Of a stretch of 64,000 bases of DNA, positions 9,409-60,794 are shown piece after piece. The DNA comes from Octopus sinensis (lineage: Eukaryota), in assembly GCF_006345805.1 (NCBI RefSeq), contig NC_043000.1, positions 42,842,001-42,906,000 of the forward strand, read 5' to 3'. The stretch's first letter is position 1. Each line of letters starts with the position of its first letter. A program made the position numbers and the translations under genes. Below the pieces are notes generated by a model. The model was not told the origin of the DNA and searched no databases. It saw only the letters and a list, made by a program, of their open reading frames with translations.

Positions 9409-11291
9409 AATAAGTAATAACAACAATAATAATGTGGAGACCTATGTTAATTGATTTGGTTGAATACCATACATTACATTAATTTCTTGGTTTTTGTTTA
9501 TGAGTATCTTTCACCACTTCGAAATCAATAAAAAATTACCAGTGATAAACAGAAAGTGGCTATTCTATTGACTGCATTCCTCTCTTATAACTCTATGGCT
9601 TTATGCCGATATAAGAAACTATTATTAATTATAATAGAACAGCCGGTTCCATTGAGTTTCTGAACGGACATCTCTGACAGCAAAGATATCTCTCAACTCA
9701 ACATTATATTACAATATACAGGATAATATTTATAATAACACAATGGATGTGTATGTCAATTGCAACCGTCGATGTAAGTTAGTTACAGGCATTTCATACA
9801 GATGTCGCCATGGAATAAACACTGAAGCATAAACAGAGGTTGTAATAATGACTTAGTCTTGAAACACATGATCACTGTTCACCCCTTTAGAATTATTATG
9901 TATGCATAAAATCACAGAACATAAATAACAAGAGTTCAACACGAGTGTTCACAGTATAAAATAGAAGAAAGGAGGAAAATTTTATCATGAAAAAGAGATG
10001 GACATACTATAAGAAGATTTTCGAGTTACCGATTTAACTACAATCTTGAAAGAGAGTAAGCTTTTAAAATTACTTATTGGTTTCATCTCAATATTTTGAA
10101 GTAATATTCAAATGTTGTTTAATTTTGCTGTTCTTTACTGTTATTCTTGGTTCAACACTCGATCTAAAACTGATCTAGGTGACCTTTGGTGAAAGAATTT
10201 ATAATGATAGTTACTCCTTCATGTAATTTTAGATGTCATGAAAGACTATATTATTTAAATCTTCCTCCTTTACCGATTTATAAATCCGCGAAGTTTGAAG
10301 TGAGGGCAGATGGTTGGCATTTTTTCCAGGTTACCAGTGGTAGAAAAACGAGTAAGAAGCGAAAACGATAATATAAAGGAGTAATGCAGATTAGGATGTG
10401 CGAAAAGGGAAGCAAAGGTTGCAAGTTGCCTATTGAAATCAGGTGCCGTGGCTTTCCATTGACGTTAGTGTGCTATTTTCTGCAGAAGATCAATTTGGAA
10501 TTGAAGCAGTTGAAGGAAGTTATGAAGGAGATAGCCATGATGTTTGATGAATGAGTGCAGGTGGAATATTTTGGCAGGTGAAAGCTAATTCAGTCCTCTC
10601 TGCCTCCCAACCCCAAATTCGAAGCGCACCGGCGAAAAGCTTGTGACTCTGTTATACTTGCTCAAGATACGGGAAGATTCCCCACCAGTAAAATCTTCAA
10701 GCAGATCCTCAACTTTTTGCGTAGATCAGAACATCTTTGGTGTTTATTTCTCTCATTTGACAATGAAATAACATAATCATTCCAATTCCATGCTAATCTT
10801 TATTATCTATGTATTTTTCTCTTGTTGTATAACATCTTTTGGTTATATAACTATAGGTAATTGAATAGACTAAGCTGTAATAACATTTCTTCCTTCACAG
10901 TTTTATTACGGGTAATATTTCTGAGAAGCGACAAACTTATGCTGGTCGTAGCCTTTCAATAGTCAGTCATAGCTTAACAAAAATCCTTTCTTGGAAAGGT
11001 TGAATTTGCTGTTGCTAGTACCTTTGAAAGGTAGTTTTTCGAATGAAAAGAATTCTGCTCATGTGATTGTTAATTTTATTGATAAATCAATAAAACACTT
11101 TGCCTATTTCGATAGCAAAACTTTTGATTTAATAGAAAAAGTTCAGAAACTTGATCCATTTCTCGTTTATCAACCAAAGATCACTGGACGAACTGAACTG
11201 AACGAATACTTAGCTGCCATTCATGAAATGAAAATGGCTGTTGATTTTCCTCCGTGTTGTGCCATTAGTAATGAAAATGTTGGCGTTCCGT

Positions 11292-11292
11292 T

Positions 11293-11362
<70 letters not shown>

Positions 11363-11536
11363 ATGTTTCAACCGCTTTTAGTGATTTCTTACAATGGCGC
11401 AAGGCCACAATTATCTCCCGGTGGTACGCATACCTTGTTTGAGATAAGACAGTAGCATATATATTTACTAGTAAAATCTCAGATTTAGCAACCGCACAAA
11501 GAGAAAAAAAAGGGGCTAGGTAAAATAAAAGTGCTG

Positions 11537-11588
<52 letters not shown>

Positions 11589-11625
11589 AACTACTACAAC
11601 TACTACTACTACTACTACTACTACT
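11292..11625. repeat. (GCA)n(GTA)n and (CTA)n trinucleotide tracts in inverted orientation
   Basis: (GTA)n ~11311-11362 and (TAC)n ~11538-11625, about 175 bp apart. Confidence 0.9.
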
Positions 11626-11932
11626 GTTGTTCTTGTTGCTATTTGTGTGACGTTTTATTTTAGATCTTTTTGCTTTTAATGCATGTGGAGGCAGAGTGTT
11701 TAATAATATAAACTACCTGCAGAGTAATGGGTCGATGCGATCGATTGTAACCTCCCATAAATTTCTACGCTCTCGTATATGCATCTTAAGATACTGTTAT
11801 TGTCAGAATAATGATGTAAATAATGCTATCTGATTGAAGTGGTATTTTGCAGGGACCATTTACGTTTTGAATTCAAATTCTATCGAAGAATATACATAAG
11901 CACACATGTAGACACACACACACAAAGACACA

Positions 11933-11976
<44 letters not shown>

Positions 11977-12354
11977 CACATTTATGTTATTTACATATAT
12001 CCGTTACTTTGGTTTTCTTTATATTTTCATCCTAAATTTGTCATTATACGAACAATTTTTCTAATTTCTGTCCCCTTCTTTGATACGTTTACGCTCGCTC
12101 TCATTTATGTCCTTGCAAATCTTATGGGTTGTGAGCACTGTTGGAATAAATAATTTGGTTCAGCCGACGAAATTTTGAGAAAGATTTCTAATTGACAACT
12201 GACGAACAGACTTTCCAGTATCCATTTGTGGTTTCTTTCAGTTTTACTGGAAAAACCCGTATGAATCTTGTTATCGTTTCAAATATCTGTGTGTGAGTGT
12301 GTGTATATATGTTTGTGTGTGTGAGTGTTTGTGTATGCATAAGTATATGTATAT

Positions 12355-12418
<64 letters not shown>

Positions 12419-12421
<3 letters not shown>

Positions 12422-12648
12422 GAAGTAAACATATAAATGTGAAACAAGGTGGGAAAAAGAGTACTCAAATACAAGGGTAGAGTAATATGCTTTATTTAAA
12501 AGCAGCAGAAAATTCAACAAAACCTGTTACTCTGAGTTTCACGTTCCCGTTCGTCAGACAGTTTTTGCTAGAAAAACTGCCCGACGAACGGGCACGTGAA
12601 ACTCAGAGTAACAGGTTTTGTTGAATTTTCTGCTGCTTTTAAATAAAG
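12419..12648. mobile_element. Head-to-head palindromic HHR mini-element in (TA)n
   Basis: ~79-bp inverted arms 12490-12568/12570-12648; each arm carries an HHR motif; (TA)n on both sides. Confidence 0.85.
12524..12561 (-). ncRNA. Minimal type I hammerhead ribozyme (canonical core)
   Basis: CUGU-CUGACGA-ACG ggaa CGU-GAAAC ucaga GUA-ACAG: stems I, II, III and all core bases present. Confidence 0.8.
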
Positions 12649-12679
<31 letters not shown>

Positions 12680-14467
12680 ATTATATTCAAGTATATAACT
12701 ACACATGTGCTTTATGTATATATATAAATGTAGATACACGAAAATAATATATATATATATATATATATACATGCAGGTATACATATGTGCATATATGTGC
12801 GTGCGTGCGTGCGTGTGTGTGTGTGTATTAATAAGCATAATTATAATTATGGTTAGCAGTGTAAGAGTGAAATGAGAAACTATTCTGGGAACTACAACTC
12901 ATTGCTTGATAGATACCACTATTATTTTTTTTATTATCTTACTGATTTTTCTGCAACATTTTTACAATCTTCATTTAATGCAAAATCCCTAGCGTTCCAT
13001 TCCATAATGAGAACATATATATTGTTAACCTACTATTATTCCAAACTTGAATGAATGAAAAACACAAAGACCCACGAAGCATTTTCTCTGCATAAATTAG
13101 TTACTATTTGCATGTAATTGCCATCAGTACAAATATATTTCCTATATAACAATATATGTATAAAACTTCACAACTTCATTTCTTACATGGAGTAAATATC
13201 TGAAATAATATGAGCCCTAAATAATGTAAGCAACATAATCAAGCGAAACAATTTTTATACTACACATCTGTTAATATTGTTATTGCATTGCATTATTTTG
13301 AAGAAGAAATAAAGTTGATATTTAACTATGTATATGATCGTATTTCTACTGAATTCCATTTTTCGTCTAACCAATTTAGCTATGCCTACAATCCGTATAT
13401 CGCCCGAGATATATCCTCATATAATATCACGTATTTAATATCAAAATAATTTACTATCAATCCAAAATTTCGGCAGAAAAAACATCTGTATTTTTTCAAT
13501 AAAAAAACCATTGGAAAGATATCTTGACTTCTTAGCTTCGAAGACATTTGGGGTATGAGAGAGGACAATGCAGCAAACAGACGTGATAAAAGCTTAACAT
13601 CCACTTTTTTCTATTCAATTCTTTTTCGCCATCGGTGATTCAATAGTTTCTGAGAGTACGTGCGGACATTGAAGAAATTAACCAAACAGACGTGAGAAAA
13701 ATAGTGGAATTTAATTGCTTCATTTTTTCATGTTCTCGACATCTTATTTCAATAAATTGGAGACAGGAAAACGGATAATAATGCAAGCAACTTTGATAAA
13801 ATAGTGGCCAAAAAATTGTTAATATTTATCATTTTTATTTTTTGTGCATCTGTCAGTATATGACTTTGTGTCAGTAATGGTTTACTCGCACTAAGTATTC
13901 TGTACACACAGTGACATTTTAAGGAACAAATAGGATTCAGATTTTAATATCAATAGGAAGAAAAAATAACGTATTTTGCAAATATTTCTCAGCAAGATAA
14001 TTTAACTCTGTATATTATGTATATATAAGGCAAAAACTAAGTTTCACAAGATGACGTATAAAGAAAATAAGAAAAATCATGAGAAATGAAAAAAATAAGT
14101 AAACGAATGAAATTAACTGAATCTAGTCTATATGGACCAATTTTGCATTAAAATTCTGTTTTTAATAAACGAAAACGAATATATACTTCGAACAATCTCA
14201 TCGTATTATTTACTTAATTGCAACATTAATTTCTAAATGATTTTCTATAACAACTGTTTAGTTAATATTTCTTTCATACAATTGAAAAACTAATGAAAGA
14301 CAAATTTCTTTTCAGGCCATTATTTAGTTAATCATTTTCGTATTTATTCGTATAGTTATTTCTTACATTTTTAAAAAACAAATTTCGACATTAAATATTG
14401 AGTTTTGAAAATATATATGAATTAAGACATTTTGTTTAGATTTCAAGAAGTTTATACGTCAATATAT

Positions 14468-16060: not shown

Positions 16061-16357
16061 CAAAGCCTTGTCAGTGGATTTGGTAGACGGAAACTGAAAG
16101 AAGCATGTCGTATATATGTATATATATGCGTGTGTGTGTTTGTCTGTCTGTGTTTGTCCCCCTAGCATTGCTTGACAACCGATGCTGGTGTGTTTACGTC
16201 CCCTTTACTTAGCGGTTCGGCAAAAGAGACCGATAGAATAAGTACTGGGCTTACAAAAGAATAAGTCCCGGGGTCGAGTTGCTCGATTAAAGACGGTGCT
16301 CCAGCATGGCTGCAGTCAAAAGACTGAAACAAGTAAAATAGTAAAAGAGTAAAGAGT
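16061..16357 (+). mobile_element. 5'-truncated tRNA-derived SINE (major family)
   Basis: gtggatttggtagacggaaactgaaagaagc..gcattgcttgacaaccgatgctgg..(aaagagt) tail, shared with 20496 and 21646 copies. Confidence 0.85.
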
Positions 16358-20378: not shown

Positions 20379-20467
<89 letters not shown>

Positions 20468-20495
20468 ATATATGTATATATTATATGTGTATATA

Positions 20496-20660
20496 GGCGC
20501 AGGAGTGGCTGTGTGGTAAGTAGCTTGTTTACCAACCACATGCTTCCTGGTTCAGTCCCACTGCGTGGCACCTTGGGCAAGTGTCTTCTACTATAGCCGC
20601 GGGCCGAGCAAAGCTTTGTGAATGGATTTGGTAGACGGAAACTGAAAGAAGCCCGTCGTA

Positions 20661-20693
<33 letters not shown>

Positions 20694-20920
20694 GCGTGTG
20701 TGTGTTTGTGTGTCTGTGTTTGTCCTCTTAGCATTGCTTGACAACCGATGCTGCTGTGTTTATGCCCCCGTTACTTAGCGGTTCGGCAAAAGAGACCGAT
20801 AGGATAAGTACTGGGCTTACAAAAGAAAAAGTCCCGGGGTCGAGTTGCTCGATTAAAGGTGGTGCTCCAGCATGGCCGCAGTCAAATGACTGAAACAAGT
20901 AAAAGAGAAGAGAAAGAGAA

Positions 20921-20922
<2 letters not shown>
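20496..20922 (+). mobile_element. Full-length tRNA-derived SINE (major family) with internal (TA)(TG) tract
   Basis: ggcgcaggagtggctgtgtggtaag..ggttcagtcccactgcgtggcacc head; aaagag tail; inserted in (TA)n. Confidence 0.9.
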
Positions 20923-20960
<38 letters not shown>

Positions 20961-21580: not shown

Positions 21581-21620
<40 letters not shown>

Positions 21621-21645
21621 TTATATATATATATATATATATATA

Positions 21646-22074
21646 GGCGCAGGAGTGGCTGTGTGGTAAGTAGCTTGCTAACCAACCACATTGTTCGGGT
21701 TCAGTCCCACTGCGTGGCATATTGGGCAAGTGTCTTCTGCTATAGCCCCCGCGCGCCGACCAATGCCTTGTGAGTGGATTTGGTAGACGGAACTGAAAGA
21801 AGCCTGTCGTATATATGTATATGTATTATAACTTGTGTGTGTGTGTGTGTGTTGTTGTGTGTGTTTTGTTGTTTTGTGTGTGTGTGTTTGTCGCCCTAGC
21901 ATTGCTTGACAACCGATGCTGGTGTGTTTAAGTCCCCGTTACTTAGCGGTTCGGCAAAAGAGACCGATAGAATAAGTACTGGGCTTACAAAGAATAAGTC
22001 CCGGGGTCGATTTGCTCGACTTAAGGCGGTGCTCCAGAATGGCCGCAGTGAAAGAAGTAAAAGAGTAAAAGAGA

Positions 22075-22076
<2 letters not shown>
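21646..22076 (+). mobile_element. Full-length tRNA-derived SINE (major family)
   Basis: Same head, body and tail as 20496 copy; inserted in (TA)n. Confidence 0.9.
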
Positions 22077-22114
<38 letters not shown>

Positions 22115-22291
22115 TTATAAATATTAGGGAATAAATCCAAATTATAGGGGAAAAAAAATCAGATTTAGGATTAAATCGATTTATAGTAAAATCTTATAAA
22201 TATTATTCGAGACAAAACCACTATTTTGCAAAACAAACAAGGAAAGACTTAATCAATACATAAAATTTTAATAAATAGTCAAAAAAAACCG

Positions 22292-22334
22292 CCACTACAA
22301 TCGTTTCTTGTCTTGATCGACAATCTTCAGGTGG
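22292..22334 (-). ncRNA. Type I hammerhead ribozyme in 3' pseudo-LTR
   Basis: CCAC-CUGAAGA-UUGUC gaucaa GACAA-GAAAC gauu GUA-GUGG: canonical core, 4-bp stem I, 5-bp stem II, short stem III. Confidence 0.88.
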
Positions 22335-23538
22335 ACTTCCAATCTAAAAATCAATATTTTAAAATATAAAAATAATAATTTTAAAATAATTAAAGTATGA
22401 ATGAAAAAATATAAGTATATAATCCATATATAACCTATCTATAATCCATATATAATCAATATATAAACAATATATAAACTAAAAAAACCTATCAACAATT
22501 AAATATAAAATATAAAATATAAAATATAAAATATAAAATATAAAACAAAAAAAAAAAAAAAAAAATAATAATATAATAATAAACTATATATACACCCATA
22601 CGCATATACCTAATTATATATAACCATATCTAACTACATACACTAAATCACACACCTATATATATATCCCTATACATACACATAAAAATGTCTAGGCAAC
22701 TATAAATAAATAAAATAGCTAAATACTTCAACACAATACTATTCATACTCCCACACACACACACATACAACCCACATTCACGCTCTAGAAAACGGACATC
22801 ACTCAAAACTATGAACGGAGAAATGGAATAAATGGAATTAAAAATTATATTCACTTGGTAAAACGAACACTACTTAAAAATTATGAATGAAACAATGCAA
22901 TAAAACAACAGACATCGCAAATAGACACAAATTACTACAAATTCCTTATCAAACCTACCATGATAACCAAAACTCATAAAAACATATAATGATAAAATCT
23001 CCCTTTACTAAACTCTATAACAAATCTATATAGCAATCCCCCTAACCTAAACATTCACACACAAATACACACACGTAAACACACACCCACGACATATACA
23101 AATACCCACACCACTTACACATACCAATACATACATATAAACCTCAACATATACTCCAAAAACCCACTCAACCCCACACAGACAAATAAACACAAAAATT
23201 ATGAATGGATTCTTTTATAAAACTACCATGATAAGCTAAAAAAACAAAACAGAAATGATAAAACCTCCCTTTACTAAACACTAAAACATACTTATATAGC
23301 AATTCTTTAACCTATACATTCACACACAATACCACTCGTAAACCACACACCCATAACAAATACAAACTCCCACCCCACTCACACACACCCACAAGTACAT
23401 ATAAGCCTCAACATATACACCAAACAAAATTACTTTACCAAGGAACTTAACATATATATAAAAAGTATAACCGCTCTGGAAACGAACATCTCTAAATTAA
23501 TGAATGGAGAAATGGAATAAATGGAATTAAAAATAAAA

Positions 23539-26435
23539 TTCACGTGGCAAAACGAACACCACTCAAAAATTATGAATGAAACAATATAATAAAACAACCA
23601 ACATCGAAAATAGACAAATTACTACGAATTCCCTAAAAAAACCATGATAAACCAAAACTCTTAAAAAACATATAACGATAAAATCTCCTTTTGCTAAACT
23701 CTATAACAAACCTATATAGTAATCCCCCTAACCTAAACATTCACACACAAACACACACGTAAACCACAGACCCACGACTTATACACATACCTAAACTAAC
23801 TTATAAACCTCCATATACACCAAAACCCACTCCCTCCCACACAGACAAATTAACTCATACATCCCAAAACCTAAATAACAAACCCATATACACATTCACA
23901 CACAAACACACACACACGCAAAACACACACACACAACAGATACATATACTCCCTCACATATACGCATATACATACTCACTAAACTCAATATATACAACAA
24001 TATTTACACACCCACACTCATACAGATAAATAAATTATACAACTAAAAACTCGCACACAATCTCATATACATAAACACTCCTACGAAAACAACATTAAAT
24101 ACATCGTAATTAACCAGAATATCAAAAATAACAATATGACATAAAGGTAAATAAAATACATACTTACAATTCAGTGTCAAATTATGAAGTGAAATTAAAT
24201 TCTTAGCCGTTAAAAAATCAAACCAAAATTACGTTACCATAGAAATAACTTATGTAAAAAAAGACTAACAAACAACTTGCAGTAACCCAAACCCATTCTC
24301 TATGCCTACCTCACTACTACACTATTCCATTCACAATTCCAAACAACGCTAGTCCACCTCCCGGTTATTCACGTGGCAAAACGAACACCACTCAAAAATT
24401 ATGAATGAAACAATGTAATAAAACAACCAACATCGAAAATAGACAAATTACCACGTATTCCCTAAAAAAACCATGATAAACCAAAACTCCTAAAAACATA
24501 TAACGATAAATCTCCCTTTGCTAAACTCTATAACAAACCTATATAGCAATCTACCTAACCTAAACATTCACACACAAAAAACACACTCGTAAACCACAGA
24601 CCCACGACTTATACACATACCTATACTAACTTATAAACCTCAATATACACCAAAACCCACTCCCTCCCACACAGACAAATTAACACATACATCCCAAACC
24701 TAAATAACAAACCCATATACACATTCACACACAAACACACACACACACGCAAAACACACACACACAACAGATACATATACTCCCTCACATATACGCATAT
24801 ACATACTCACTAAACTCGATATATACAACAATATTTACACACCCACACTCATACAGATAAATAAATTATACAACTAAAAACTCGCACACAATCTCATATA
24901 CATAAACACACCTATGAAAACAACATTAAATACATCGTAATTAACCAGAATATCAAAATAACAATATGACATAAGGATAAATAAAATACATACTACAAGT
25001 CAATTTCAAATAATGAAGTGAAATTAAATTCTTAGCCGTTAAAAAAACCAAACCAAAGTTACGTTACCATAGAAATAACTTATATAAAAAAAAAAAATAA
25101 AAAAAAGAGAGATTACGCGCCATAGAAATTAAACGTCATTTAAATTATGAATGGAGAAATAGAATAAATGGAACTAAAAACTATATCCACGTGGCAAACC
25201 AACACTACTTAATAAAAATTATTATGAATGGATTCTTTAAAAAACTACCATGAAAAATCATTATATACATCTATGAGCTTTAGCTCACCTTAGCAGCTCT
25301 AACAAACAACTTGCAGTAACCCAAACCCATTCTCTATACCTACCTCACTACTACACTATTCCATTCACAATTCCAAGCAACGCTAGTCCACCACCCGGTT
25401 ATTCACGTGGCAAAACGAACACCACTCAAAAATTATGAATGAAACAATGTAATAAAACAACCAACATCGAAAATAGACAAATTACCACGAATTCCCTAAA
25501 ATAACCATGATAAACCAAAACTCATAAAAACATATAACGATAAAATCTCCCTTTGCTAAACTCTATAATAAACCTATATAGTAATCCCCCTAAACCTAAA
25601 CATTCACACACAAATACACACTCGTAAACCACAGACCCACGACTTATACACATACCTATCCTAATTTATAAACCTCAATATACACCAAAACCCACTCCCT
25701 CCCCACACAGACAAATTAACACAAACATCCCAAAACCTAAAAATAACAACCCATATACACATTCACACACAAACACACACAAACACAAAAAACACACACA
25801 CACAACAGATACATATACTCCCTCACATATACTCATATATATACTCACTAAACTCGATATATACAACAATATTTACACACCCCCACTCATACAGATAAAT
25901 AAAATATACAACTAAAAACTCACACACAATCTCATATACATAAACACTCCTATGAAAACAACATTAAATACATCGTAATTAACCAGAATATCAAAATAAC
26001 AATATGACATAAGGATAAATAAAATACATACTACAAGTCAATTTCAAATAATGAAGTGAAATTAAATTCTTAGCCGTTAAAAAAACCAAACCAAAGTTAC
26101 GTTACCATAGAAATAACTTATGTAAAAAAAAAAAAAAAAAAGAGAGAATACGCGCCATAGAAATTAAACGTCATTTAAATTATGAATGGAGAAATAGAAT
26201 AAATGGAACTAAAAACTATATCCACGTGCCAAACCAACACTACGTAAAAAAATTTATAATGAATGGATTCTTTAAAAAACTACCATGAAAAATCATTATA
26301 TACATTTATGAGCTTTAGCTCACCCTAGCAGCTCTAACAAACAACCTACAACAACCCAAACCTATTCCCGATGCCTACCTCACTACCACACTAATCATTC
26401 CCAATTCCAAGCAACGCTAGTCCACCACCCGGTTA
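23539..26435. repeat. Three ~0.8-1.0 kb tandem units within the PLE 3' region
   Basis: ttcacgtggcaaaacgaacaccactc recurs at 23539, 24368 and 25402; a diverged unit starts near 22851; + strand is strongly A/C-rich and G-poor. Confidence 0.9.
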
Positions 26436-27582
26436 CAATTCCCAACTCCACCCATTCATTCACAATTTCAACGACATTCGCCTCCACAGCGCTACATATA
26501 AGCCTCAACATATACACCGGAGATACACTTACACATCCGTGCGGATGGGTGAGAGTATACATTGAGTGTAGTGATGGGGCTCCCATTACTATACACATTT
26601 GTACCTGTGTGGTAGTCTCCATGTGTATATTACGCACGGTTATAAATGCAGGGGGTACACTCGCACGTCATTTGCGTGTACCCCTCACATGTACATATGC
26701 ATGCTATTTGGGCTCGATATATGCAACAATGTAAGCGCGCCCGCATACATGCATATGGGCGAATTGCACAATCAAAAAACGCACACGTGTGTGTGTGCGT
26801 TCCCTGGTTGTGCAATTCACCCATCTGGGTGTGAGTGGGTGTAATCTTATCACTGTGGATGTCGAGCTTAATACGTATTTATATAAGTGTGTATTAGGGG
26901 GTTGTACGTATTAATTATGTGCATGTGCTTCACGCACTTGCGTCCATATATGGATGAATATATTGGGATTACTATGTGGGTGTAAATTGGGTATGGAGGG
27001 GGGAATTTTGTCATTGTATGGGTGTGGGTTTCATTTGTGATAGTGGTTAGTTGGTGATTTTTAGTATGTTCTGTATATTTGGGTTAGTTATGTATTATTC
27101 TAGTGTGTATAATTGTATACATATAATTGGTGTGAATGGGATTACACCATTTTTGGGGATGTATGTGTTTATTTATCCATGTGGGGCGGGAGTGGCCGTT
27201 AGGTGCATATGCCGAGGCTCACATGCAATTCCAGGTACATCGAATGAAGTGGGCACTTATATTTGTTATGGGTGTGTGTACTTTATAATAACAGACAATA
27301 CCCAATAAAATCTGTCAATTCAACATACCAAATAAAAAACAAAAAACAAAGGGATCTTAAACATTCACACATACATACAAAACTCAATAAAAACACCACT
27401 AAATAACACCCATAAACATATAAATATATCCTCCAAAATATATACATTAAAAATGAACTAATTAAAACAAAGAAATATAAATAAAGACTAACTATAATTA
27501 AAGCCTAGACAACATAACCAAAAATATATTATCTAAACTAATTTAAACTAAACTAAAGTAACCTAAAAGGGAACTATTATTG

Positions 27583-30103
27583 CTATTTATCATGAAACTT
27601 ATTATATAGGTAAAGTAACTTATGTCTGCATTTTATTTTGCGCTCCTCGCCAGTATTAAGTAAATTATCATACTTATAAAATAAAATTTCTTTAAACTCA
27701 TTAGAGCATAAATAACAACAATTAGCTCCTATAGTATATGATTTAGTTTTACAAATTATTTCCCAAATTAAACTATAATTAATATTTAGTGATTTAAGAC
27801 TCCAAATGTACTTACTAAGTCCGGTTGAGTTGATTAAGTTTTTATTTTTAAAAGAATTCATATGTTGTGCGATTCTTAGTTTTATTTTTGAGGAAGTAGA
27901 ACCTATATAAACCGCTTTTTTGTAATTATTATTCTTAAAGTTATTATCATGTAATGTAACTATACATTTATACACTACATCGTTAATATCACAATTATTA
28001 TTTAATATACAATTAGATTTATCTCTACATGTACAATTAATATAAGTCTTATCATTATTAATATTATTATCAAATAATTTCTTTTTATAAAAATTATTCA
28101 GTTTATATTTATTAAATGAAGAAATAATGTTACCAACATTATTAGTGGTAGAGTAACCAACTCCAAAATTATTAAAAGAGAAAATGTTTCTATATTTACG
28201 ATTATCTCTAATAAATAGTTCTATAACATCTAAAATCTCTTTAATAATATTCGTTTTTACTTGATCTCCATAAGGAACTATTAACCAAATTTTATTCTTA
28301 TTAACCTTATTATTATTATCATTATTATAAATATATTTATAATTCTTTATTTTATTAAAATTATTATCAGAATTATATCTATGTACAGCATTTAAGGAAT
28401 TATTAATATTATTAAATTTATCAATATAATTATTATAATAATTATTAAATTTATTTTTATTTATATTATTCTTATTTATATTATTATTATTATATTTATT
28501 ATTATTATTATTATTCTTATTTATATTTTTATCATTTTTATTATTTTTTTAAAAATATCTATTATTTTTACCACTAAACCTAACAAAATTATAATTATTA
28601 TTAGAAGTATCTCGAAAATTAACAATTAAATCTTTATCACTAATATTATAAAATTTAATATTCCTATTATAACCTGCCCCTCTAAGGGCCTCATTATAAT
28701 AATTAGCATGTTTATTAAAAATCTCTATATCATAAGAGAGTAATGAAATACGTTTACTTATATTATTAATCAACGATTTTTTAATAGAAAATGGGTGATT
28801 ACTATTAACATTTATATATCTAAGGTTCTCATTAAGTTTATGATATGGTTGTGTTTTACCTGTAATAAGATTAAAATTAACATCTAAATAATTAACATTA
28901 TAATTCTCCTTATATATAGTAATACTTAAACCATATCTTTTAAAGAAACTATATAGTTTTTTCTTATATACTTCTAGATTCCTATTAGTACAATTCTTTG
29001 TAACTAGTAGAAGATCGTCTCTATATAAACCACCCTCTATCTTAAGATTTTCTAATTGGAGTTCAGATAAAAGAAAAATACCTACTAAATCAGTAGCCTG
29101 TGCAGAATCTGGTGCTCCCATAGGTATATCAAAACAATCTCTAGTATCATTCCTAGCCCATAATTTATTTTTATATTTAATTAGCGATTTCCTAGCCATT
29201 TTAATTACATTAACTTCTTCCCGTGACATACCCGCTTTATTCATTGCGAAAATAAGCGCTTTATTAAACACAATTTCATTAATAGAAGAATAATAATTAT
29301 CTATATCTATTTGAATAAATTTATAACGATTTTTATCTTTAATATTATTAAACCATTTCAATGTATTATTATTACTAAACCATAATTTTAAATAATTAAG
29401 TTTATTTAACTTATCAATATATTTATCTAAAATAAATTTACTAAAATAAATTTACTAGGTCCGATTTACATGGGCAAATTAATCTAACTTTAGGGTCTGA
29501 ATAAAAATTATCTTTATGGTCTTTAAGAGTAATTCTGGGGTGCAAAGGTACATAAGGTTCAGTTTTATTATCCAACTCATATTTTAACATTACTACTTTA
29601 GAGGCCTTATTAATATTATAAAGAATATCATCTGGAACAATTTTATATTTTTTAATTATTTCTTTCCCTAATAGTTTATCATATAATTTAACATCTAATT
29701 TATATAAGTTCCTTGTTTTATCAGATTGTACTATAATACCATCCATATTTCTCATATCTTTAATTTTAATTGCTAAATTCCTTAAATATTCATTATTTCT
29801 ATTTGGGTATTTATGGAATTCAATATTTTTTACCACCTTCCATATACTATCTTCAAGTAATTGTAATTCTTTATTAAATGGAGGTTCCTTTCTAGATTTA
29901 AATTTAGAGGTAAAATTATCATTCCTACTATCAATATCATTAAATAAATAAAAATTATAGTAAAAAGCTTTCCATTTAATTCTAGAAATAAAATCTTTAA
30001 CATTATTAACAAGTTTCAAAATAAATTCCTTTCTAGAAGGAATAGGAATATCTTTCAAAGATGAATCCCAAAACAGCGGTTCTATCTTACCTGTAAAATC
30101 CAT
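27583..30103 (-). CDS. PLE polyprotein (RT + Asn-rich linker + GIY-YIG endonuclease), ~840 codons, with one frameshift (~29445) and one in-frame TAA (28549-28551)
   Basis: RT motifs IQIDIDNYY, IPMGAP, GGLYRDDL, NYLDVNF; YINVNSNHP thumb; IWLIVPY; CTCRDKSNC..C; VVYKC..YIGST..R..H; CYLC..CRH. Frame read manually with no stop from 28548 to 27586. Confidence 0.88.
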
Positions 30104-30337
30104 AATTTACGAAATTGAGGTATTACACTCAATATACAAAATTATCAATATTATATAAATAATAAATATTAGGGAATAAATCCAAATTTACAGGGAAAAG
30201 AAATCAGATTTAGGATTAAATCGATTTTATAGTAAAATCTTATAAAATATTATTCGAGACAAAACCACTATTTTGCAAAACAAACAAGGAAAGACTTAAT
30301 CAATACATAAAATGTTAATAAATAGTCAAAAAAACCG

Positions 30338-30380
30338 CCACTACAATCGTTTCTTGTCTTGATCGACAATCTTCAGGTGG
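30338..30380 (-). ncRNA. Type I hammerhead ribozyme in 5' pseudo-LTR
   Basis: Identical to 22292-22334; lies ~235 nt upstream of the ATG at 30103. Confidence 0.88.
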
Positions 30381-33035
30381 ACTTCCAATCTAAAAAATCA
30401 ATATTTTAAAATATAAAAATAATAATTTTAAAATAATTAAAGTATGAATGAAAAAATATAAGTATATAATCCATATATAACCTATCTATAATCCATATAT
30501 AATCAATATATAAACAATATATAAACTAAAAAAACCTATCAACAATTAAATATAAAATATAAAATATAAAATATAAAATATAAAACAAAACAAAAAAAAA
30601 TAATAATAATATAATAATAAACTATATATACACCCATACGCATATACCTAATTATATATAACCATATCTAACTACATACACTAAATCACACACCTATATA
30701 TATATCCCTATACATACACATAAAAATGTCTAGGCAACTATAAATAAATAAAATAGCTAAATACTTCAACACAATACTTATTCATACTCCCACACACACA
30801 CACATACAACCCACATTCACGCTCTAGAAAACGGACATCACTCAAAACTATGAACGGAGAAATGGAATAAATGGAATTAAAAATTATATTCACTTGGTAA
30901 AACGAACACTACTTAAAAATTATGAATGAAACAATGCAATAAAACAACAGACATCGCAAATAGACACAAATTACTACAAATTCCTTATCAAACCTACCAT
31001 GATAACCAAAACTCATAAAAACATATAATGATAAAATCTCCCTTTACTAAACTCTATAACAAACCTATATAGCAATCCCCCTAACCTAAACATTCACACA
31101 CAAATACACACACGTAAACCACACACCCACGACATATACAAATACCCACACCACTTACACATACCAATACATACATATAAACCTCAACATATACTCCAAA
31201 AACCCACTCAACCCCACACAGACAAATAAACACAAAAATTATGAATGGATTCTTTTATAAAACTACCATGATAAACTAAAACTCACAAAACAGAAATGAT
31301 AAAAACTCCCTTTACTAAACACTAAAACATACTTATATAGCAATTCCTTTAACCTATACATTCACACACAATACCACTCGTAAACCACACACCCATAACA
31401 AATACAAACTCCCACCCCACTCACACACACCCACAAGTACATATAAGCCTCAACATATACACCAAACAAAATTACTTTACCAAGGAACTTAACATATATA
31501 TAAAAAGTATAACCGCTCTGGAAACGAACATCTCTAAATTAATGAATGGAGAAATGGAATAAATGGAATTAAAAATAAAATTCACGTGGCAAAACGAACA
31601 CCACTCAAAAATTATGAATGAAACAATATAATAAAACAACCAACATCGAAAATAGACAAATTACTACGAATTCCCTAAAAAAACCATGATAAACCAAAAC
31701 TCATAAAAACATATAACGATAAAATCTCCCTTTGCTAAACTCTATAATAAACCTATATAGTAATCCCCCTAAACCTAAACATTCACACACAAATACACAC
31801 TCGTAAACCACAGACCCACGACTTATACACATACCTATCCTAATTTATAAACCTCAATATACACCAAAACCCACTCCCTCCCCACACAGACAAATTAACA
31901 CAAACATCCCAAAACCTAAATAACAAACCCATATACACATTCACACACAAACACACACACACACAAAAAACACACACACACAACAGATACATATACTCCC
32001 TCACATATACTCATATATATACTCACTAAACTCGATATATACAACAATATTTACACACCCACACTCATACAGATAAATAAAATATACAACTAAAAACTCA
32101 CACACAATCTCATATACATAAACACTCCTATGAAAACAACATTAAATACATCGTAATTAACCAGAATATCAAAATAACAATATGACATAAGGATAAATAA
32201 AATACATACTACAAGTCAATTTCAAATAATGAAGTGAAATTAAATTCTTAGCCGTTAAAAAAACCAAACCAAAGTTACGTTACCATAGAAATAACTTATA
32301 TAAAAAAAAAAAATAAAAAAAAAGAGAGATTACGCGCCATAGAAATTAAACGTCATTTAAATTATGAATGGAGAAATAGAATAAATGGAACTAAAAACTA
32401 TATCCACGTAGCAAACCAACACTACGTAAAAAAATTTATAATGAATGGATTCTTTAAAAAACTACCATGAAAAATCATTATATACATTTATGAGCTTTAG
32501 CTCACCCTAGCAGCTCTAACAAACAACCTACAACAACCCAAACCTATTCCCGATGCCTACCTCACTACCACACTAATCATTCCCAATTCCAAGCAACGCT
32601 AGTCCACCACCCGGTTACAATTCCCAACTCTACCCATTCATTCACAATTTCAACGACATTCGCCTCCACAGCGCTACATATAAGCCTCAACATATACACC
32701 GGAGATACACTTACACATCCGTGCGGATGGGTGAGAGTATACATTGAGTGTAGTGATATATATGTGTGTGTGTGTGTGTGCGTATGTGTGTGTAAGTGTG
32801 TGTGTTCGTGCGTGCATGCGATGTTAGATGTTTGCATGTGGCTTCACTTTACATATTTATTTCAGTAAATATTTACATGCGTAAATATTATCCACCGAGA
32901 GATATATATTTACCTGCCAAACTGCTTACCTACCTGCCTACCAACATATCGACCTATATTTTTACATACATGCAAACTTACATACAGAAAGGTAGATAGA
33001 CTGATAGACATAAATATTACATGTATATATATATG

Positions 33036-34316: not shown

Positions 34317-34737
34317 ACTCTTTTACTCTTTTACTCTTTTACTTGTTTCAGTCATTTGACTGCGGCCATGCTGGAGCACCGCCTCTAATCGATCAAATCG
34401 ACCCCGGAACTTATTCTTTGTAAGCCCAGTACTTATTCTATCGGTCTCTTTTTGTGCCGAACCGCTAAGTGACGGGGACGTAAACACACCAGCATCGGTT
34501 GTCAAGCAATGCTAGGGGGGGGCAAACACAGACACACAAACACACACACATACATATATATATATACATATATACGACAGGCTTCTTTCAGTTTCCGTCT
34601 ACCAAATCCACTCACAAGGCATTGGTCGGCCCGGGACTATAGCAGAAGACTCTTGCCCAAGATGCCACGCAGTGGGACTGAACCCGGAACCATGTGGTTG
34701 GTTAGCAAACTACTTAGCACACAGCCACTCCTGCGCC
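34317..34737 (-). mobile_element. Full-length tRNA-derived SINE (major family)
   Basis: Reverse complement of the 20496 family with (aaaagagt)n tail. Confidence 0.9.
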
Positions 34738-34869
34738 TATATATGCATACAAATATTAAAAAATAATAGAGGATGAAGTTCCCTTCCTTATGAGGTATGC
34801 CTCATTCTGTGGTGGAAATATTTTTATCACGGTAGGACGACGATCCATCACAGGATTACAAAATTTTGC

Positions 34870-39915: not shown

Positions 39916-40009
39916 TTCAACATAATCGATAAAACGATGTAGGAGGAATTAGCTAACGACTCCACAAACACACCCACAGACAGAATTTCCCACATATGTT
40001 GTATATATA

Positions 40010-40435
40010 GGCGCAGGCGTGGCTGCGTGCTAAGAAGCTTGCTTCTTAACCACATGGTTTCGGGTTCAGATCCACTGCGTGGCACATTGTGGAAGTGTCG
40101 TCTGCTATAGTCTCGGACCGACTAAGACCTTGTGAGTGTATTTAGTAGTCGGAAACTGAAAGAGATCTATTATTTATACATATGTGTGTGTGCGTCTGTG
40201 TGTGTACTTGAGAGTATGGGTCTGTGTTTGTCACCCCATCATCGCTTGACAACCGATGCTGATCTGTTTACGTGCCCGTAAATTAGCGTTTCGGCAAGGG
40301 AGACATGTAGAATAAGTACTGGCCAAGCAAATAATATTATATCCTGTGGTCGAATTCTTCAACTAAAACTGTTTAAGGCTGTGCTCCAGCATTACCGCTG
40401 TCAAATGACTGAAACAAGTAAAAGTATAAAAGAAT
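40010..40435 (+). mobile_element. tRNA-derived SINE, older subfamily of the major family
   Basis: ggcgcaggcgtggctgcgtgctaag..gggttcagatccactgcgtggcac head; diverged body. Confidence 0.85.
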
Positions 40436-40514: not shown

Positions 40515-41199
40515 TATATAAACAACTTATATACAAGAGCAAAAGAAAATTATATCTATGCCAATATGCTGATAACGGACTTTTAAGTCGTCAATTTCCA
40601 CATATTATTATACCCAATACAGAAATACGTTGTGCTGAAATCGAAGAAAGCTAGCCAACAGAATTTTTTTTAAAAGTTCGTTATTTCTATATTGAATCAA
40701 TTTCGGAATTAATATCATAATAGATTTTTTCCTCTTCAGTAGAAAATACGAATAGAAATAAATGAAATACTTACATGTGCCTATGGAAAAAAAGCCGAAG
40801 CAAAAATCAGGGGTACATATAAGTACCCCAGATGAATAAATGAAATACTTACATTGCCGAAGCAAAAATCATGAGTACATATATGTACTCTGGGGTACTT
40901 ATATGTAGTATATACTTATATGTAGTATCTATTTAGTACATCAGTCATTGTGTATCACTTTGAAAACTATACATTTTCGAACGGTGCTTAGCAGCGTCAT
41001 CTCAGCTGGGCAGTTATTTTGTGCTGAGGAAGAGAAAGAAACCAGAAACCGTGGTCCACAGATATTGCTCTGTGCTGAGTGGAGTTGCTAAACTCCGCTG
41101 TTCAAAAATATAAGGACACAGATATGCGACGTATAGCCAACTGGAGACGATATTATTTTAATTTCATCTCCATTTTCCATACATGATCAGCTATACCCG

Positions 41200-44764: not shown

Positions 44765-44969
44765 GTGACCTCGTGTGTACCGTTGGCGATTCTTTTTCCT
44801 CTGTCTTCCCTTCTCTGGATCTTTCCTTCTCCTATGTTTCCGACGAAGAGCTCCGCTCGAAACGTTAAACCCTCCTTCTTTCCTTCTTTCCTGAGCGTCC
44901 AATAATACCATATTTGTTCCACGTCCTCGCGTTGTTGTGTTTTTTTGTGCTTTCTTGTTTGGATTAACT
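44765..44969 (+). mobile_element. ~205-bp HHR mini-element ending ggattaact|(TA)n
   Basis: GUUU-CCGACGA-a-GAGC ucc GCUC-GAAAC GUU-AAAC at 44836-44870; same family at 51405, 51615 and 60593. Confidence 0.8.
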
Positions 44970-47333: not shown

Positions 47334-47648
47334 ATGTAGGATAAAATTTATTTCGAAAATTTTAGCCACCATATTAAAAAATACCTTTAAAGGTTAAAAT
47401 TATAAACAACTTATAAATAAGGGCAAACGAGAAAATTTCTAATGTCAAATATGCCGAAAAATTGGACATATTGTCCATTACCATATAATTTTTCACAATA
47501 TGCACGCTACTCGAAACATGCACGCTACTCAAACGAACAGCTTCGAGTAGCGTGCATATTGTGAAAAATTATATGTTAATGGACAATATGTCCAATTTTT
47601 CGGCATATTTGGCATTAGAAATTTTTTCATTTTCCCTTATTTATAAGT

Positions 47649-47651
<3 letters not shown>
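47331..47651. mobile_element. Palindromic element in (TA)n, ~110-bp arms
   Basis: Arms 47406-47515/47542-47651, left arm extended by ~75 bp; (TA)n on both sides. Confidence 0.75.
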
Positions 47652-47688
<37 letters not shown>

Positions 47689-48995: not shown

Positions 48996-50830
<1,835 letters not shown>

Positions 50831-50871
50831 ATATGTATTTATATATGTATGAATATAGGTATACAGTTGTG

Positions 50872-54899: not shown

Positions 54900-55039
54900 T
54901 ACGGAGATGTACTCGCATAGCAAGTAATTTGATCTGAGATCGTGTGCTGAAACGAAAACAATTGCAGCGTGGAAGGTGTTTATAAGCCATTTAAGAAACA
55001 CACAAAAGCCGTTCGATTCACTTCAACATTTAAGTTTAA

Positions 55040-55090
55040 TTTGTCAAAATATTTTCGTCGCTATAAGACCGCGACCTGTTCACTGACAAA
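55040..55090 (-). ncRNA. Hammerhead motif with G3-C8 swapped core
   Basis: UUUGUCA-GUGAACA-g-GUCGC ggucuuaua GCGAC-GAAA AUAUU U-UGACAAA: 7-bp stem I, 5-bp stem II, palindromic AAUAUU stem III. Confidence 0.7.
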
Positions 55091-55105: not shown

Positions 55106-55155
55106 TTTGTCAGTGAACAGGTCGCGGATTTTAGCGATGAAAATATTTTGACAAA
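55106..55155 (+). ncRNA. Second copy of the G3-C8 hammerhead motif
   Basis: UUUGUCA-GUGAACA-g-GUCGC ggauuuua GCGAU-GAAA AUAUU U-UGACAAA. Confidence 0.65.
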
Positions 55156-60592: not shown

Positions 60593-60794
60593 AGTTAATC
60601 CAAACATGAAAACACAAAGAGCAAACACAACAACGCGAGGGCCTGGAACAAATGTAGTATTATTGGACGCTCAGGAAGGAAGGGGAGAAGGAGGGCTTAA
60701 CGTTTCGAGCGGAGCTCTTCGTCGGAAACATAGGAGAAGGAAAGATCCAGAGAAGGGAAGACAGAGGAAAAAATCGCCAACGGTACACACGCGG

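What the first reader, a model, noticed from the sequence alone, without database searches (positions are those of the whole stretch)
22118..32757. Young Penelope-like element with an ~8-kb unit and multi-kb pseudo-LTRs
The repeat unit is 8045 bp, of which only 2.5 kb codes. The 3' non-coding part is ~5.4 kb, and the upstream partial copy provides a 2.6-kb pseudo-LTR whose HHR lies ~235 nt before the ATG. This is long for an EN+ PLE as I know them. The LYRDD active site, IW.VPY and CxC linker resemble non-Poseidon C-terminal-EN clades (clade assignment is inference). It is the obvious candidate RT donor for nearby HHR mini-elements.
Basis: partly seen in the sequence, partly recalled or inferred. 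Interest (0 to 1): 0.8.

Follow-up and report, generated by a model that had tools for sequence, protein, structure and literature searches.

The report
Long, broken Hydra-clade Penelope-like retrotransposon
This is a real but inactivated copy of a Penelope-like retrotransposon of the known "Hydra" clade, probably in an octopus-type genome; it is ordinary except for a non-coding tail about eight times longer than in its relatives.

Summary
On the minus strand, a 2,610-bp 5'-truncated partial copy (32757→30148) sits directly upstream of a full 8,045-bp unit (30147→22103). The two share 98.8-98.9% of bases in their unique parts. Each carries an identical minimal hammerhead ribozyme; the upstream one cuts 238 nt before the ATG.

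The ORF (30103→27583) encodes a telomerase-like RT plus a C-terminal GIY-YIG nuclease. It shows every published hallmark of the Hydra clade of Penelope-like elements: DKT, an RWK-like motif, a CxCX5C linker, CxxC/CxH instead of CCHH, and insertion into (TA)n.

Three corrections:
- The ORF is not intact. It has a +1 frameshift in a T-run (29446-29443) and an in-frame TAA (28551-28549).
- The 5.5-kb 3'UTR is mostly iterated copies of one ~1-kb GT-rich module. The full unit has three tandem copies, the upstream copy has one, and there is an old inverted copy.
- Nothing links this copy to the nearby hammerhead mini-element. Their ribozymes and 3' tails are unrelated.

Relatives in Argonauta, Octopus bimaculoides and this same window have 0.65-0.9-kb 3'UTRs and ~3-kb units, so the length is the only unusual feature. 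It rests on one locus.

Verdict: new member of a known kind, low to moderate interest.

The parts
30148..32757 (-). Upstream 5'-truncated partial copy (pseudo-LTR), 2,610 bp. It corresponds to 26575->22103 of the full unit but holds only one R module (31580-32617).
   Evidence: Self-BLAST. Alignment: 1.1-1.2% substitutions against the full unit. The 5' edge abuts (CA)n(TA)n.
30338..30380 (-). Hammerhead ribozyme 1 (minimal type, PLE style): CCAC/CUGAAGA/UUGUC-GAUCAA-GACAA/GAAA/CGAUUG-UA|GUGG. Predicted cut after A30342, 238 nt before the ATG.
   Evidence: Dimer cofold pairs ACGAUUGU with itself to form an extended helix III.
30104..30147 (-). 5' leader of the full unit, between the end of the upstream copy and the ATG.
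   Evidence: Alignment of the junction with the true 3' end: similarity stops at ...CCCTAATATTTAT.
27583..30103 (-). RT + GIY-YIG ORF, ~840 codons, about 21% G+C, interrupted twice. Motif coordinates: RIKWKAF 29963-29983; SDKTRNLY 29702-29725; GGLYRDDLL 29008-29034; IWLIVPY 28270-28290; CTCRDKSNC 28009-28035; VVYKCIV 27958-27978; VYIGSTS 27892-27912; CCYLCSNE 27697-27720; KCRH 27622-27633. Stop TAG at 27585-27583.
   Evidence: Homologues at E 3e-137. A homologue model matches telomerase RTs.
29443..29446 (-). Frameshift site: a run of four T. Reading continues in the +1 frame. Frame 0 ends at TAG 29443-29441.
   Evidence: The alignment to homologues shows KSDL..SKFILD continuing across the shift.
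28549..28551 (-). In-frame TAA stop at the start of the Asn-rich insert.
28399..28570 (-). In-frame (AAT)n-like microsatellite. It forms part of the ~85-residue Asn/Lys-rich insert between the RT thumb and the W..PP motif. Most homologues lack the insert.
   Evidence: TRF; alignment.
26576..27582 (-). Proximal 3'UTR, found only in the full unit. It has a T-rich part (27582-27301) and a C/A-rich block (27300-26576). The block is an old inverted copy of the R module, with a strong hairpin at 26740-26839.
   Evidence: Composition. Inverted similarity scores 72.5 bits against 32+-5 for shuffles. Hairpin z = -9.7.
23538..26435 (-). Three tandem copies of the GT-rich R module: R3 25401-26435, R2 24367-25400, R1 23538-24366 (829 bp). 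They are 3.4-4.5% apart.
   Evidence: The sense strand has only 5-8% C.
22103..23537 (-). Distal 3'UTR. It holds a partial R-like copy (22781-23106), AT microsatellites (22416-22588), hammerhead 2 and the 3' terminus ...CCCTAATATTTAT (~22106), which abuts (TA)n.
22292..22334 (-). Hammerhead ribozyme 2, identical to ribozyme 1. Predicted cut after A22296, ~190 nt from the 3' end.
32758..32815 (.). Target microsatellite (CA)n(TA)n at the 5' side. The matching (TA)n at the 3' side is ~22060-22105.

Best explanation
What it is. This is one insertion of a Hydra-clade, endonuclease-containing Penelope-like retrotransposon. It went into a (TA)n microsatellite as the usual partial tandem: a 5'-truncated copy directly followed by a full unit.

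Likely life cycle (inferred from other PLE clades):
- Transcription starts in the upstream repeat and reads through the unit.
- The single ORF gives a telomerase-like RT fused to a GIY-YIG nuclease.
- The nuclease, guided by its CxCX5C linker, cuts (TA)n DNA.
- The RT copies the RNA from the unit's 3' end, which lies just upstream of the next ORF start. It often runs on into the preceding unit, and that creates the pseudo-LTR.
- The two minimal hammerheads can pair as a dimer through their quasi-palindromic loop 3 (CGAUUG). If they cut, they would release an 8,046-nt unit RNA.

State of this copy. It has since decayed by one frameshift and one stop, so it is a dead copy of a family that was active recently.

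The long 3'UTR. The 5.5 kb is not extra coding capacity. It grew by repeated duplication of a ~1-kb GT-rich module, in tandem and once inverted. This happened before this insertion, because the modules differ more from each other (3.4-4.5%) than the two pseudo-LTR copies do (1.1-1.2%).

Shown here: anatomy, motifs, homology, fold, target site, decay. Inferred: promoter, ribozyme activity, and the RT initiation site.
For: Anatomy and identities.

ORF homology:
- 43 full-length relatives, best E 3e-137.
- At least 2,738 relatives with a profile.
- The RT core hits Apostichopus japonicus proteins at 41% identity. Craig et al. name this species as a Hydra-clade host.

Hallmark motifs conserved in the alignments:
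- DKT and LYRDD are invariant.
- R.RWKAF is conserved.
- The linker is CNCR.K..C, that is CxCX5C.
- The nuclease has C..C-E...N...C.H.

Fold: a homologue model (pLDDT 92) has telomerase RTs as its best PDB matches, 6zdq and 3du5, E 4e-9 to 1e-8.

Target site: (CA)n(TA)n on one side and (TA)n on the other, as published for the clade.

Hammerheads:
- Two identical copies, with a dimer fold.
- Relative L002 has one ~190 nt before its ORF, with the same GUA site. Its helices I and II have different sequences but keep their pairing.
- The architecture matches the minimal dimeric PLE hammerheads of Cervera & de la Pena 2014.

RT initiation just upstream of the ORF start, and tandem transcripts: Frangieh et al. 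2024.
Against: - No other copy of this family could be examined. It is not shown that the 5.5-kb 3'UTR belongs to the family rather than to this one lineage or locus.
- The upstream copy's 5' edge (32757 = 26575) falls exactly at a sharp change in base composition in the full unit. Random 5' truncation does not predict that.
- Hammerhead activity is untested. Rfam models do not score these motifs. In the one PLE studied in vitro, cleavage was not needed for insertion.
- Pfam and PDB sequence searches find no RT or GIY-YIG domain. Domain identity rests on motifs, on homologues, and on the fold match for the RT part only.
- The clade call rests on published motif descriptions, not on a tree with reference sequences.
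Confidence: 0.85

Rival explanations
1. Composite of two elements. The GT-rich, hammerhead-bearing module (32757->30148 and 26575->22103) is a separate non-autonomous element, a large retrozyme-like or pLTR-derived parasite. It flanks or has fused to a ~3.6-kb autonomous PLE body (30147->26576). On this view the '8-kb unit' is not one transposon.
For: - Both GT-rich blocks begin at the same base (CACTACACTC...). In the full unit this coincides with an abrupt switch from C/A-rich to G/T-rich sequence.
- Relatives have only 0.65-0.9-kb 3'UTRs.
- Retrozymes are proposed to derive from PLE pseudo-LTRs.
Against: - The 3.6-kb body has no hammerhead or recognisable 3' end of its own. Its relatives keep a hammerhead near the 3' end.
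- The upstream block ends 44 nt before the ATG, as expected for a canonical pseudo-LTR junction.
- The C/A-rich block is itself an old inverted copy of the same GT-rich module, so that material has been part of this 3'UTR for a long time.
Confidence: 0.1
2. Local rearrangement or assembly artefact. The second long repeat would come from a segmental tandem duplication, or from a falsely duplicated haplotype, and not from retrotransposition.
For: - Long tandem repeats at 95-99% identity are hard to assemble.
- The two copies differ in R-module number.
Against: - The duplicated block ends at the element's own 3' terminus and is joined head-to-tail to the 5' leader and ORF.
- Its outer edge abuts the target microsatellite.
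- The same partial-tandem layout occurs in the Argonauta relative.
- The copies differ by 1.1-1.2% spread evenly along their length.
Confidence: 0.04

Closest known systems
Hydra clade of C-terminal EN+ Penelope-like elements (Craig, Yushenova, Rodriguez & Arkhipova 2021, PMC8557442)
   Same: - DKT instead of DKG, and an RWK-type N-terminal motif.
- A CxCX5C linker.
- No CCHH in the nuclease; CxxC and CxH flank the conserved E and N.
- A hammerhead in the pseudo-LTR.
- Insertion into (TA)n.
- An aquatic invertebrate (mollusc) host.
   Different: - The published families are 'generally short (<3 kb)'. This unit is 8.0 kb because of a 5.5-kb repeat-built 3'UTR.
- The ORF carries an ~85-residue Asn-rich microsatellite insert.
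- The ORF has only 8% C on the sense strand.
Cephalopod relatives found here: Argonauta hians locus L001, Octopus bimaculoides locus L006, and the relic at window 49095-50870
   Same: - Same protein family, 31-59% identity.
- (TA)n targets.
- Partial-tandem or inverted arrangements.
- The window relic has a degenerate hammerhead near its 3' end.
   Different: - Their 3'UTRs are 0.65-0.9 kb, and the Argonauta unit is ~3.2 kb.
- No nucleotide similarity to this element's 3'UTR was found.
Chlamys clade PLEs (same paper)
   Same: Long units (3.3-8.2 kb without pLTRs), with length increased by internal tandem repeats.
   Different: Chlamys elements have an N-terminal nuclease, lack canonical hammerheads and occur in the green lineage and protists.
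[quoted passage not shown]
   Same: RT followed by GIY-YIG in one ORF, pseudo-LTRs with minimal dimeric hammerheads, 5' truncation, and probably the same mechanism.
   Different: Those clades have DKG and the CCHH nuclease motif. Neptune and Nematis have a CX2-5CxxC linker and Penelope/Poseidon has none. This protein has DKT, CxCX5C and no CCHH.
Octopus vulgaris curated Penelope families (PMC13282606)
   Same: PLEs make up 6.8% of that genome (190 families). Thirty families have recently active insertions averaging ~5.5 kb (1,795,539 bp over 329 insertions), so long, young PLE copies are already catalogued in octopus.
   Different: I could not compare sequences, so I do not know whether this exact family is in that library.

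Membership tests
Penelope-like elements, EN+ (C-terminal nuclease) | Reverse transcriptase of the telomerase-like type | tested here: met
   RT motifs are present (FDIPMGAPDSA, GGLYRDDLL). The model of full-length homologue P0004 (37% identical to the window protein, E 1.5e-107) has telomerase RTs as its best PDB matches. Pfam RVT_1 does not hit.
Penelope-like elements, EN+ (C-terminal nuclease) | GIY-YIG nuclease fused at the C-terminus in the same ORF | tested here: met
   VVYKCIV ... VYIGSTS ... R..QH ... E ... N lie at 27978-27622 and are conserved across 67 homologues. The assignment is by motif only: there is no Pfam hit, and no domain-level fold search was run.
Penelope-like elements, EN+ (C-terminal nuclease) | Partial-tandem insertion that forms pseudo-LTRs, with 5' truncation | tested here: met
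   A 2,610-bp truncated copy is joined head-to-tail to a full unit.
Penelope-like elements, EN+ (C-terminal nuclease) | Hammerhead ribozyme motif in the pseudo-LTR | tested here: met
   Complete cores occur in both repeats. The dimer fold is compatible, and relatives keep the pairing of helices I and II with different sequences. Catalytic activity was not tested.
Hydra clade | DKT in place of DKG; RWK motif; GxKF/Y not conserved | tested here: met
   QSDKTRNLY, with DKT invariant. The window has RIKWKAF and the homologues have RMRWKAF. The position of GxKF/Y reads FKSRK.
Hydra clade | Linker Zn-finger-like motif CxCX5C | tested here: met
   CTCRDKSNC at 28009-28035. The consensus is CNCRxKxxC, with the Cys residues invariant.
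Hydra clade | [quoted passage not shown] | tested here: met
   The motifs are CYLC-SNE and N...KCRH. The only invariant Cys/His in the nuclease part of 67 homologues are the catalytic-region H plus C..C and C.H.
Hydra clade | Insertion into (TA)n | tested here: met
   Both flanks are (TA)n. The same holds for the relic at 49095-50870 and for Argonauta L001.
Hydra clade | Short unit (<3 kb); typical of the clade, not defining | tested here: not met
   The unit is 8,045 bp. Most contigs carrying relatives are 2.2-2.9 kb.
Hydra clade | Placement inside the clade in an RT phylogeny with reference PLEs and TERTs | not tested
Indirect support only: close hits in Apostichopus japonicus, a named Hydra-clade host.
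Penelope/Poseidon, Neptune, Nematis | DKG motif and CCHH nuclease motif; linker absent (Penelope/Poseidon) or CX2-5CxxC (Neptune, Nematis) | tested here: not met
   The protein has DKT, CxCX5C and no CCHH.
Non-LTR retrozyme | Short tandem units bounded by hammerheads, without an ORF | tested here: not met
   The hammerheads are 8,046 nt apart and enclose an RT-EN ORF.

The most novel reading that the evidence does not exclude
An octopod lineage of Hydra-clade PLEs may have acquired, and kept through active transposition, a multi-kb GT-rich 3'UTR built from a ~1-kb module. Alternatively, that hammerhead-bearing module may be a large non-autonomous partner that now travels with the RT gene. Either case would be a new structural variant of the clade and a possible link between PLE pseudo-LTRs and retrozyme-like elements.
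Probability: 0.2. Interest if true: 0.45.

Novelty: new member of a known kind. Interest (0 to 1): 0.3.

Why it matters
It matters little on its own. PLEs fill about 7% of an octopus genome, and the Hydra clade, its motifs, its (TA)n preference and its hammerheads are all published.

Three modest points:
- It gives a clear mollusc example in which every Hydra-clade hallmark can be read off one locus.
- It shows that a clade described as shorter than 3 kb can carry a 5.5-kb 3'UTR. If a census confirms this, RT recognition needs only the very end of the RNA, and internal repeats can inflate PLE size.
- Standard Rfam hammerhead models miss these PLE ribozymes, so automated annotation will undercount them.

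Tried and rejected
- Rfam at gathering cut-off and at E<=10 gave no hammerhead hit, only spurious microRNA matches on microsatellites.
- Pfam on the three ORF pieces and on 15 homologues gave no RT or GIY-YIG hit.
- A PDB sequence search with a profile found nothing.
- An exact-protein look-up of the 220-aa ORF piece, to find other copies, returned 'not on record'.
- I looked for closer relatives with the RT core alone. The best was 59% identical over about half the query (O. bimaculoides), so the same family was not found in the protein collection.
- I considered a short intron at the frameshift, since the sequence there reads GTAAATTTATTTTAG twice. I rejected it because no GT..AG choice restores the frame, whereas one extra T in the T-run explains it.
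- I considered a variant genetic code for the in-frame TAA. I rejected it because it is a single stop, and the ORF ends normally at TAG with further stops just downstream.
- I considered recent editing or hypermutation as the cause of the C-poor sense strand. I rejected it for the recent past because differences between the two repeat copies show no directional bias.
- MAFFT could not align the hammerheads in register, so I built no covariance model and compared the helices by hand.
- The Logan contigs of the two closest proteins (L003, L004) carry almost no flanking sequence and were uninformative about architecture.
Full report
**1. The observation**

A self-comparison of 20-35 kb shows two long direct repeats:
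- 22103-24262 matches 30148-32308 at 96.9%.
- 25401-26575 matches 31580-32757 at 98.6%.
- The offset is 8,045 bp.

The only long reading frames lie on the minus strand between 30103 and 27583, so the element reads right to left. In that sense the order is:
- a 2,610-bp partial copy (32757→30148);
- a 44-nt leader;
- the ORF (30103→27583);
- a 5,480-nt non-coding region (27582→22103).

**2. The ORF is broken**

- Frame 0 runs from the ATG at 30103 to a TAG at 29443-29441.
- The protein continues in the +1 frame from 29451.
- The switch lies in a run of four T (29446-29443). The alignment with homologues runs straight across it (KSDL…SKFILD).
- Further on there is an in-frame TAA at 28551-28549. 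It sits at the start of an Asn/Lys-rich insert made partly by an in-frame (AAT)n-like microsatellite (28399-28570). Most homologues lack this insert.
- The ORF ends at TAG 27585-27583.

This copy cannot make RT as it stands, unless both lesions are assembly errors. Only raw reads can settle that.

**3. What the protein is**

Sequence libraries do not name it:
- Pfam finds nothing in the three ORF pieces or in 15 homologues.
- A profile finds nothing in PDB sequences.

Homology is nevertheless overwhelming:
- 43 full-length relatives, best E 3e-137 at 44% identity.
- At least 2,738 relatives with a profile.

An AlphaFold model of full-length homologue P0004 is confident (pLDDT 92). P0004 is 37% identical to the window protein. 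The model's best PDB matches are telomerase RTs: 6zdq at E 4e-9 and 3du5 at E 1.5e-8. That is what is expected of a Penelope-like RT. The C-terminal 130 residues carry the GIY…YIG…R..H…E…N series.

**4. Clade**

Craig et al. 2021 define the Hydra clade of C-terminal-nuclease PLEs by these features:
- DKT instead of DKG;
- an RWK motif, with no conserved GxKF/Y;
- a CxCX5C linker;
- no CCHH in the nuclease, with possible CxxC and CxH around the conserved E and N;
- readily detected hammerheads;
- insertion into (TA)n.

The window element has each one:
- QSDKTRNLY, RIKWKAF, CTCRDKSNC, CYLC…E and N…KCRH. The same residues are invariant across 67 homologues.
- Its 5' edge abuts (CA)n(TA)n and its 3' end abuts (TA)n.

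I did not make a tree with reference sequences, because none were available.

**5. The ribozymes**

Rfam finds no hammerhead, even at E≤10. A pattern search finds two identical complete cores, at 30338-30380 and 22292-22334:

CCAC-CUGAAGA-UUGUC(GAUCAA)GACAA-GAAA-CGAUUG-UA↓GUGG

- Helix III is a single pair, and its loop is quasi-palindromic. In a two-copy cofold, ACGAUUGU pairs with itself.
- This is the dimeric minimal design described for PLEs: short helix I, long helix II, small palindromic helix III.
- The cut sites are 8,046 nt apart. The upstream one is 238 nt before the ATG.

Related hammerheads keep the same cleavage triplet GUA and a 4-bp helix I, with different but still complementary sequences:

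| Source | Helix I |
|---|---|
| Focal element | CCAC/GUGG |
| Relative L002, ~190 nt before its ORF | UCUC/GAGA |
| L002, second site | UUGC/GCAA |
| Window mini-element at 12557 | CUGU/ACAG |

Activity is untested. In the one PLE studied in vitro, cleavage was not needed for insertion.

**6. The long 3'UTR**

Reading in the sense direction:
- a T-rich stretch (27582-27301);
- a C/A-rich block (27300-26576);
- 4.5 kb of G/T-rich sequence with only 5-8% C.

The G/T-rich part holds three tandem copies of a ~1-kb module:

| Module | Coordinates |
|---|---|
| R3 | 25401-26435 |
| R2 | 24367-25400 |
| R1 | 23538-24366 |

It also holds a partial copy at 22781-23106, then microsatellites, the hammerhead and the 3' end.

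The C/A block is an old inverted copy of the same module:
- Its inverted similarity scores 72.5 bits, against 32±5 for block shuffles and 48 for the reversed sequence.
- A strong hairpin sits at the turning point, 26740-26839, z = -9.7.

The upstream partial copy has one module, and that accounts for the 1,863-bp length difference.

Timing: the modules differ from each other by 3.4-4.5%, whereas the upstream copy and the full unit differ by 1.1-1.2%. The array therefore existed before this insertion. So the long 3'UTR was already present in the source element and did not arise by expansion at this locus.

**7. Is the length unusual?**

For the clade, yes:
- The paper says 'generally short (<3 kb)'.
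- Most contigs carrying relatives are 2.2-2.9 kb.
- The Argonauta relative has a 3.2-kb unit with a 656-nt 3'UTR and a 255-nt pseudo-LTR in (TA)n.
- An O. bimaculoides relative has at most ~0.9 kb of 3'UTR.
- A second, older Hydra-type copy in this window (49095-50870, + strand) is flanked by (TA)n. It has a 0.7-kb 3'UTR with a degenerate hammerhead.

For PLEs as a whole, no:
- Chlamys families reach 8.2 kb, partly through tandem repeats.
- Recently active Penelope insertions in Octopus vulgaris average about 5.5 kb, and PLEs fill 6.8% of that genome.

**8. The donor claim**

The nearest hammerhead mini-element (about 12400-12660, minus strand) is a ~260-bp insertion flanked by (TA)n, with an inverted partial copy. 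This is the typical look of a severely 5'-truncated PLE insertion.
- Its ribozyme helices and its 3' tail are unrelated to those of the focal element.
- A sensitive BLAST of the focal element's last 318 nt finds nothing there.

Trans-mobilisation by an intact sister copy cannot be excluded.

**9. Mechanism**

The best-supported picture is the ordinary PLE cycle, as set out under Best explanation. One point follows from Frangieh et al. 2024. In a Poseidon element the protein binds the first ~170 nt of the ORF RNA and starts reverse transcription just upstream of it. The 3' end of a unit is therefore defined by the next ORF start.
- Here the upstream copy ends 44 nt before the ATG, which fits.
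- If the rule holds for Hydra elements, this locus in cis could only have mobilised its upstream 2.6-kb piece. No ORF start follows the full unit.

This is inference.

**10. An open detail**

The upstream copy starts at exactly the base where the full unit switches from C/A-rich to G/T-rich sequence. Random truncation does not predict this.
- It could mean that RT tends to stop at the structured inverted block.
- It could mean that the G/T-rich block is a module with its own identity, which is the composite rival.

A census would decide.

**11. Verdict**

The feature is real and the main interpretation is right. The element belongs to a published clade, and this copy is dead. The only unusual trait is a long, repeat-built 3'UTR known so far from one locus.

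Noticed in passing
window 49095-50870 (+): A second, older Hydra-type PLE copy. It is 5'-truncated, flanked by (TA)n on both sides, and ~50% identical in its nuclease region. It has a 0.7-kb 3'UTR and a degenerate hammerhead near 50790.
   Followed up: partly
window ~12400-12660 (-): A ~260-bp mini-insertion between two (TA)n tracts. It carries a complete minimal hammerhead (core at 12557: CUGU/CUGACGA/ACG-GGAA-CGU/GAAA/CUCAGAG-UA|ACAG). Head-to-head with it is an inverted partial copy whose core is mutated. It is unrelated in sequence to the focal element.
   Followed up: partly
window ~40690-40745 (-): A weak, AT-rich hammerhead-like match (UUUCUA/CUGAAGA/…/GAAA/…AUA|UAGAAA). It may be chance.
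   Followed up: no
window 20429-20950, 21584-22102, 34334-34768 (inverted), 16061-16320, 40002-40322: A ~450-520-bp SINE-like repeat family, 77-92% identical between copies. Where the ends were read (21584-22102), the copy is flanked by (TA)n. That copy sits just beyond the (TA)n tract at the PLE's 3' end. No tRNA-like gene was detected by ARAGORN.
   Followed up: partly
window 22103-30147 (-): The sense strand is extremely poor in C along nearly the whole element. The ORF has 8.4% C, with 3-7% C and 48-59% T at third codon positions. The G/T-rich 3'UTR has 5-8% C and ~70% G+T. Homologous ORFs in other species have 20-25% C. Differences between the two repeat copies show no directional bias, so this is a long-term property of the family and not recent hypermutation.
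   Followed up: partly
window 26740-26839 (-): A strong RNA hairpin (z = -9.7) lies at the turning point between an old inverted copy and a direct copy of the R module in the 3'UTR. Several Rfam microRNA models score it weakly; these hits are probably spurious.
   Followed up: partly
window 32757 / 26575: The 5' edge of the upstream partial copy coincides with the sharp C/A-rich to G/T-rich composition switch in the full unit.
   Followed up: partly
window 47401-47515 / 47542-47656; 54958-55066 / 55129-55237; 44793-44942 / 60623-60772: Three inverted-repeat pairs at 95-97% complementarity. Two are close hairpins (MITE-like) and one spans 15.7 kb.
   Followed up: no
L001 6802-9542 / 10272-13012 (Argonauta hians): Two head-to-head inverted copies of the related PLE, 99.96% identical. 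A 255-nt pseudo-LTR precedes the ORF and the 3' end lies in (TA)n. My pattern found no hammerhead there.
   Followed up: partly
window, whole: (TA)n and (TA/CA)n microsatellites are very dense, and every PLE-type insertion seen here sits in one. Rfam's relaxed search reports many spurious microRNA hits on them.
   Followed up: no
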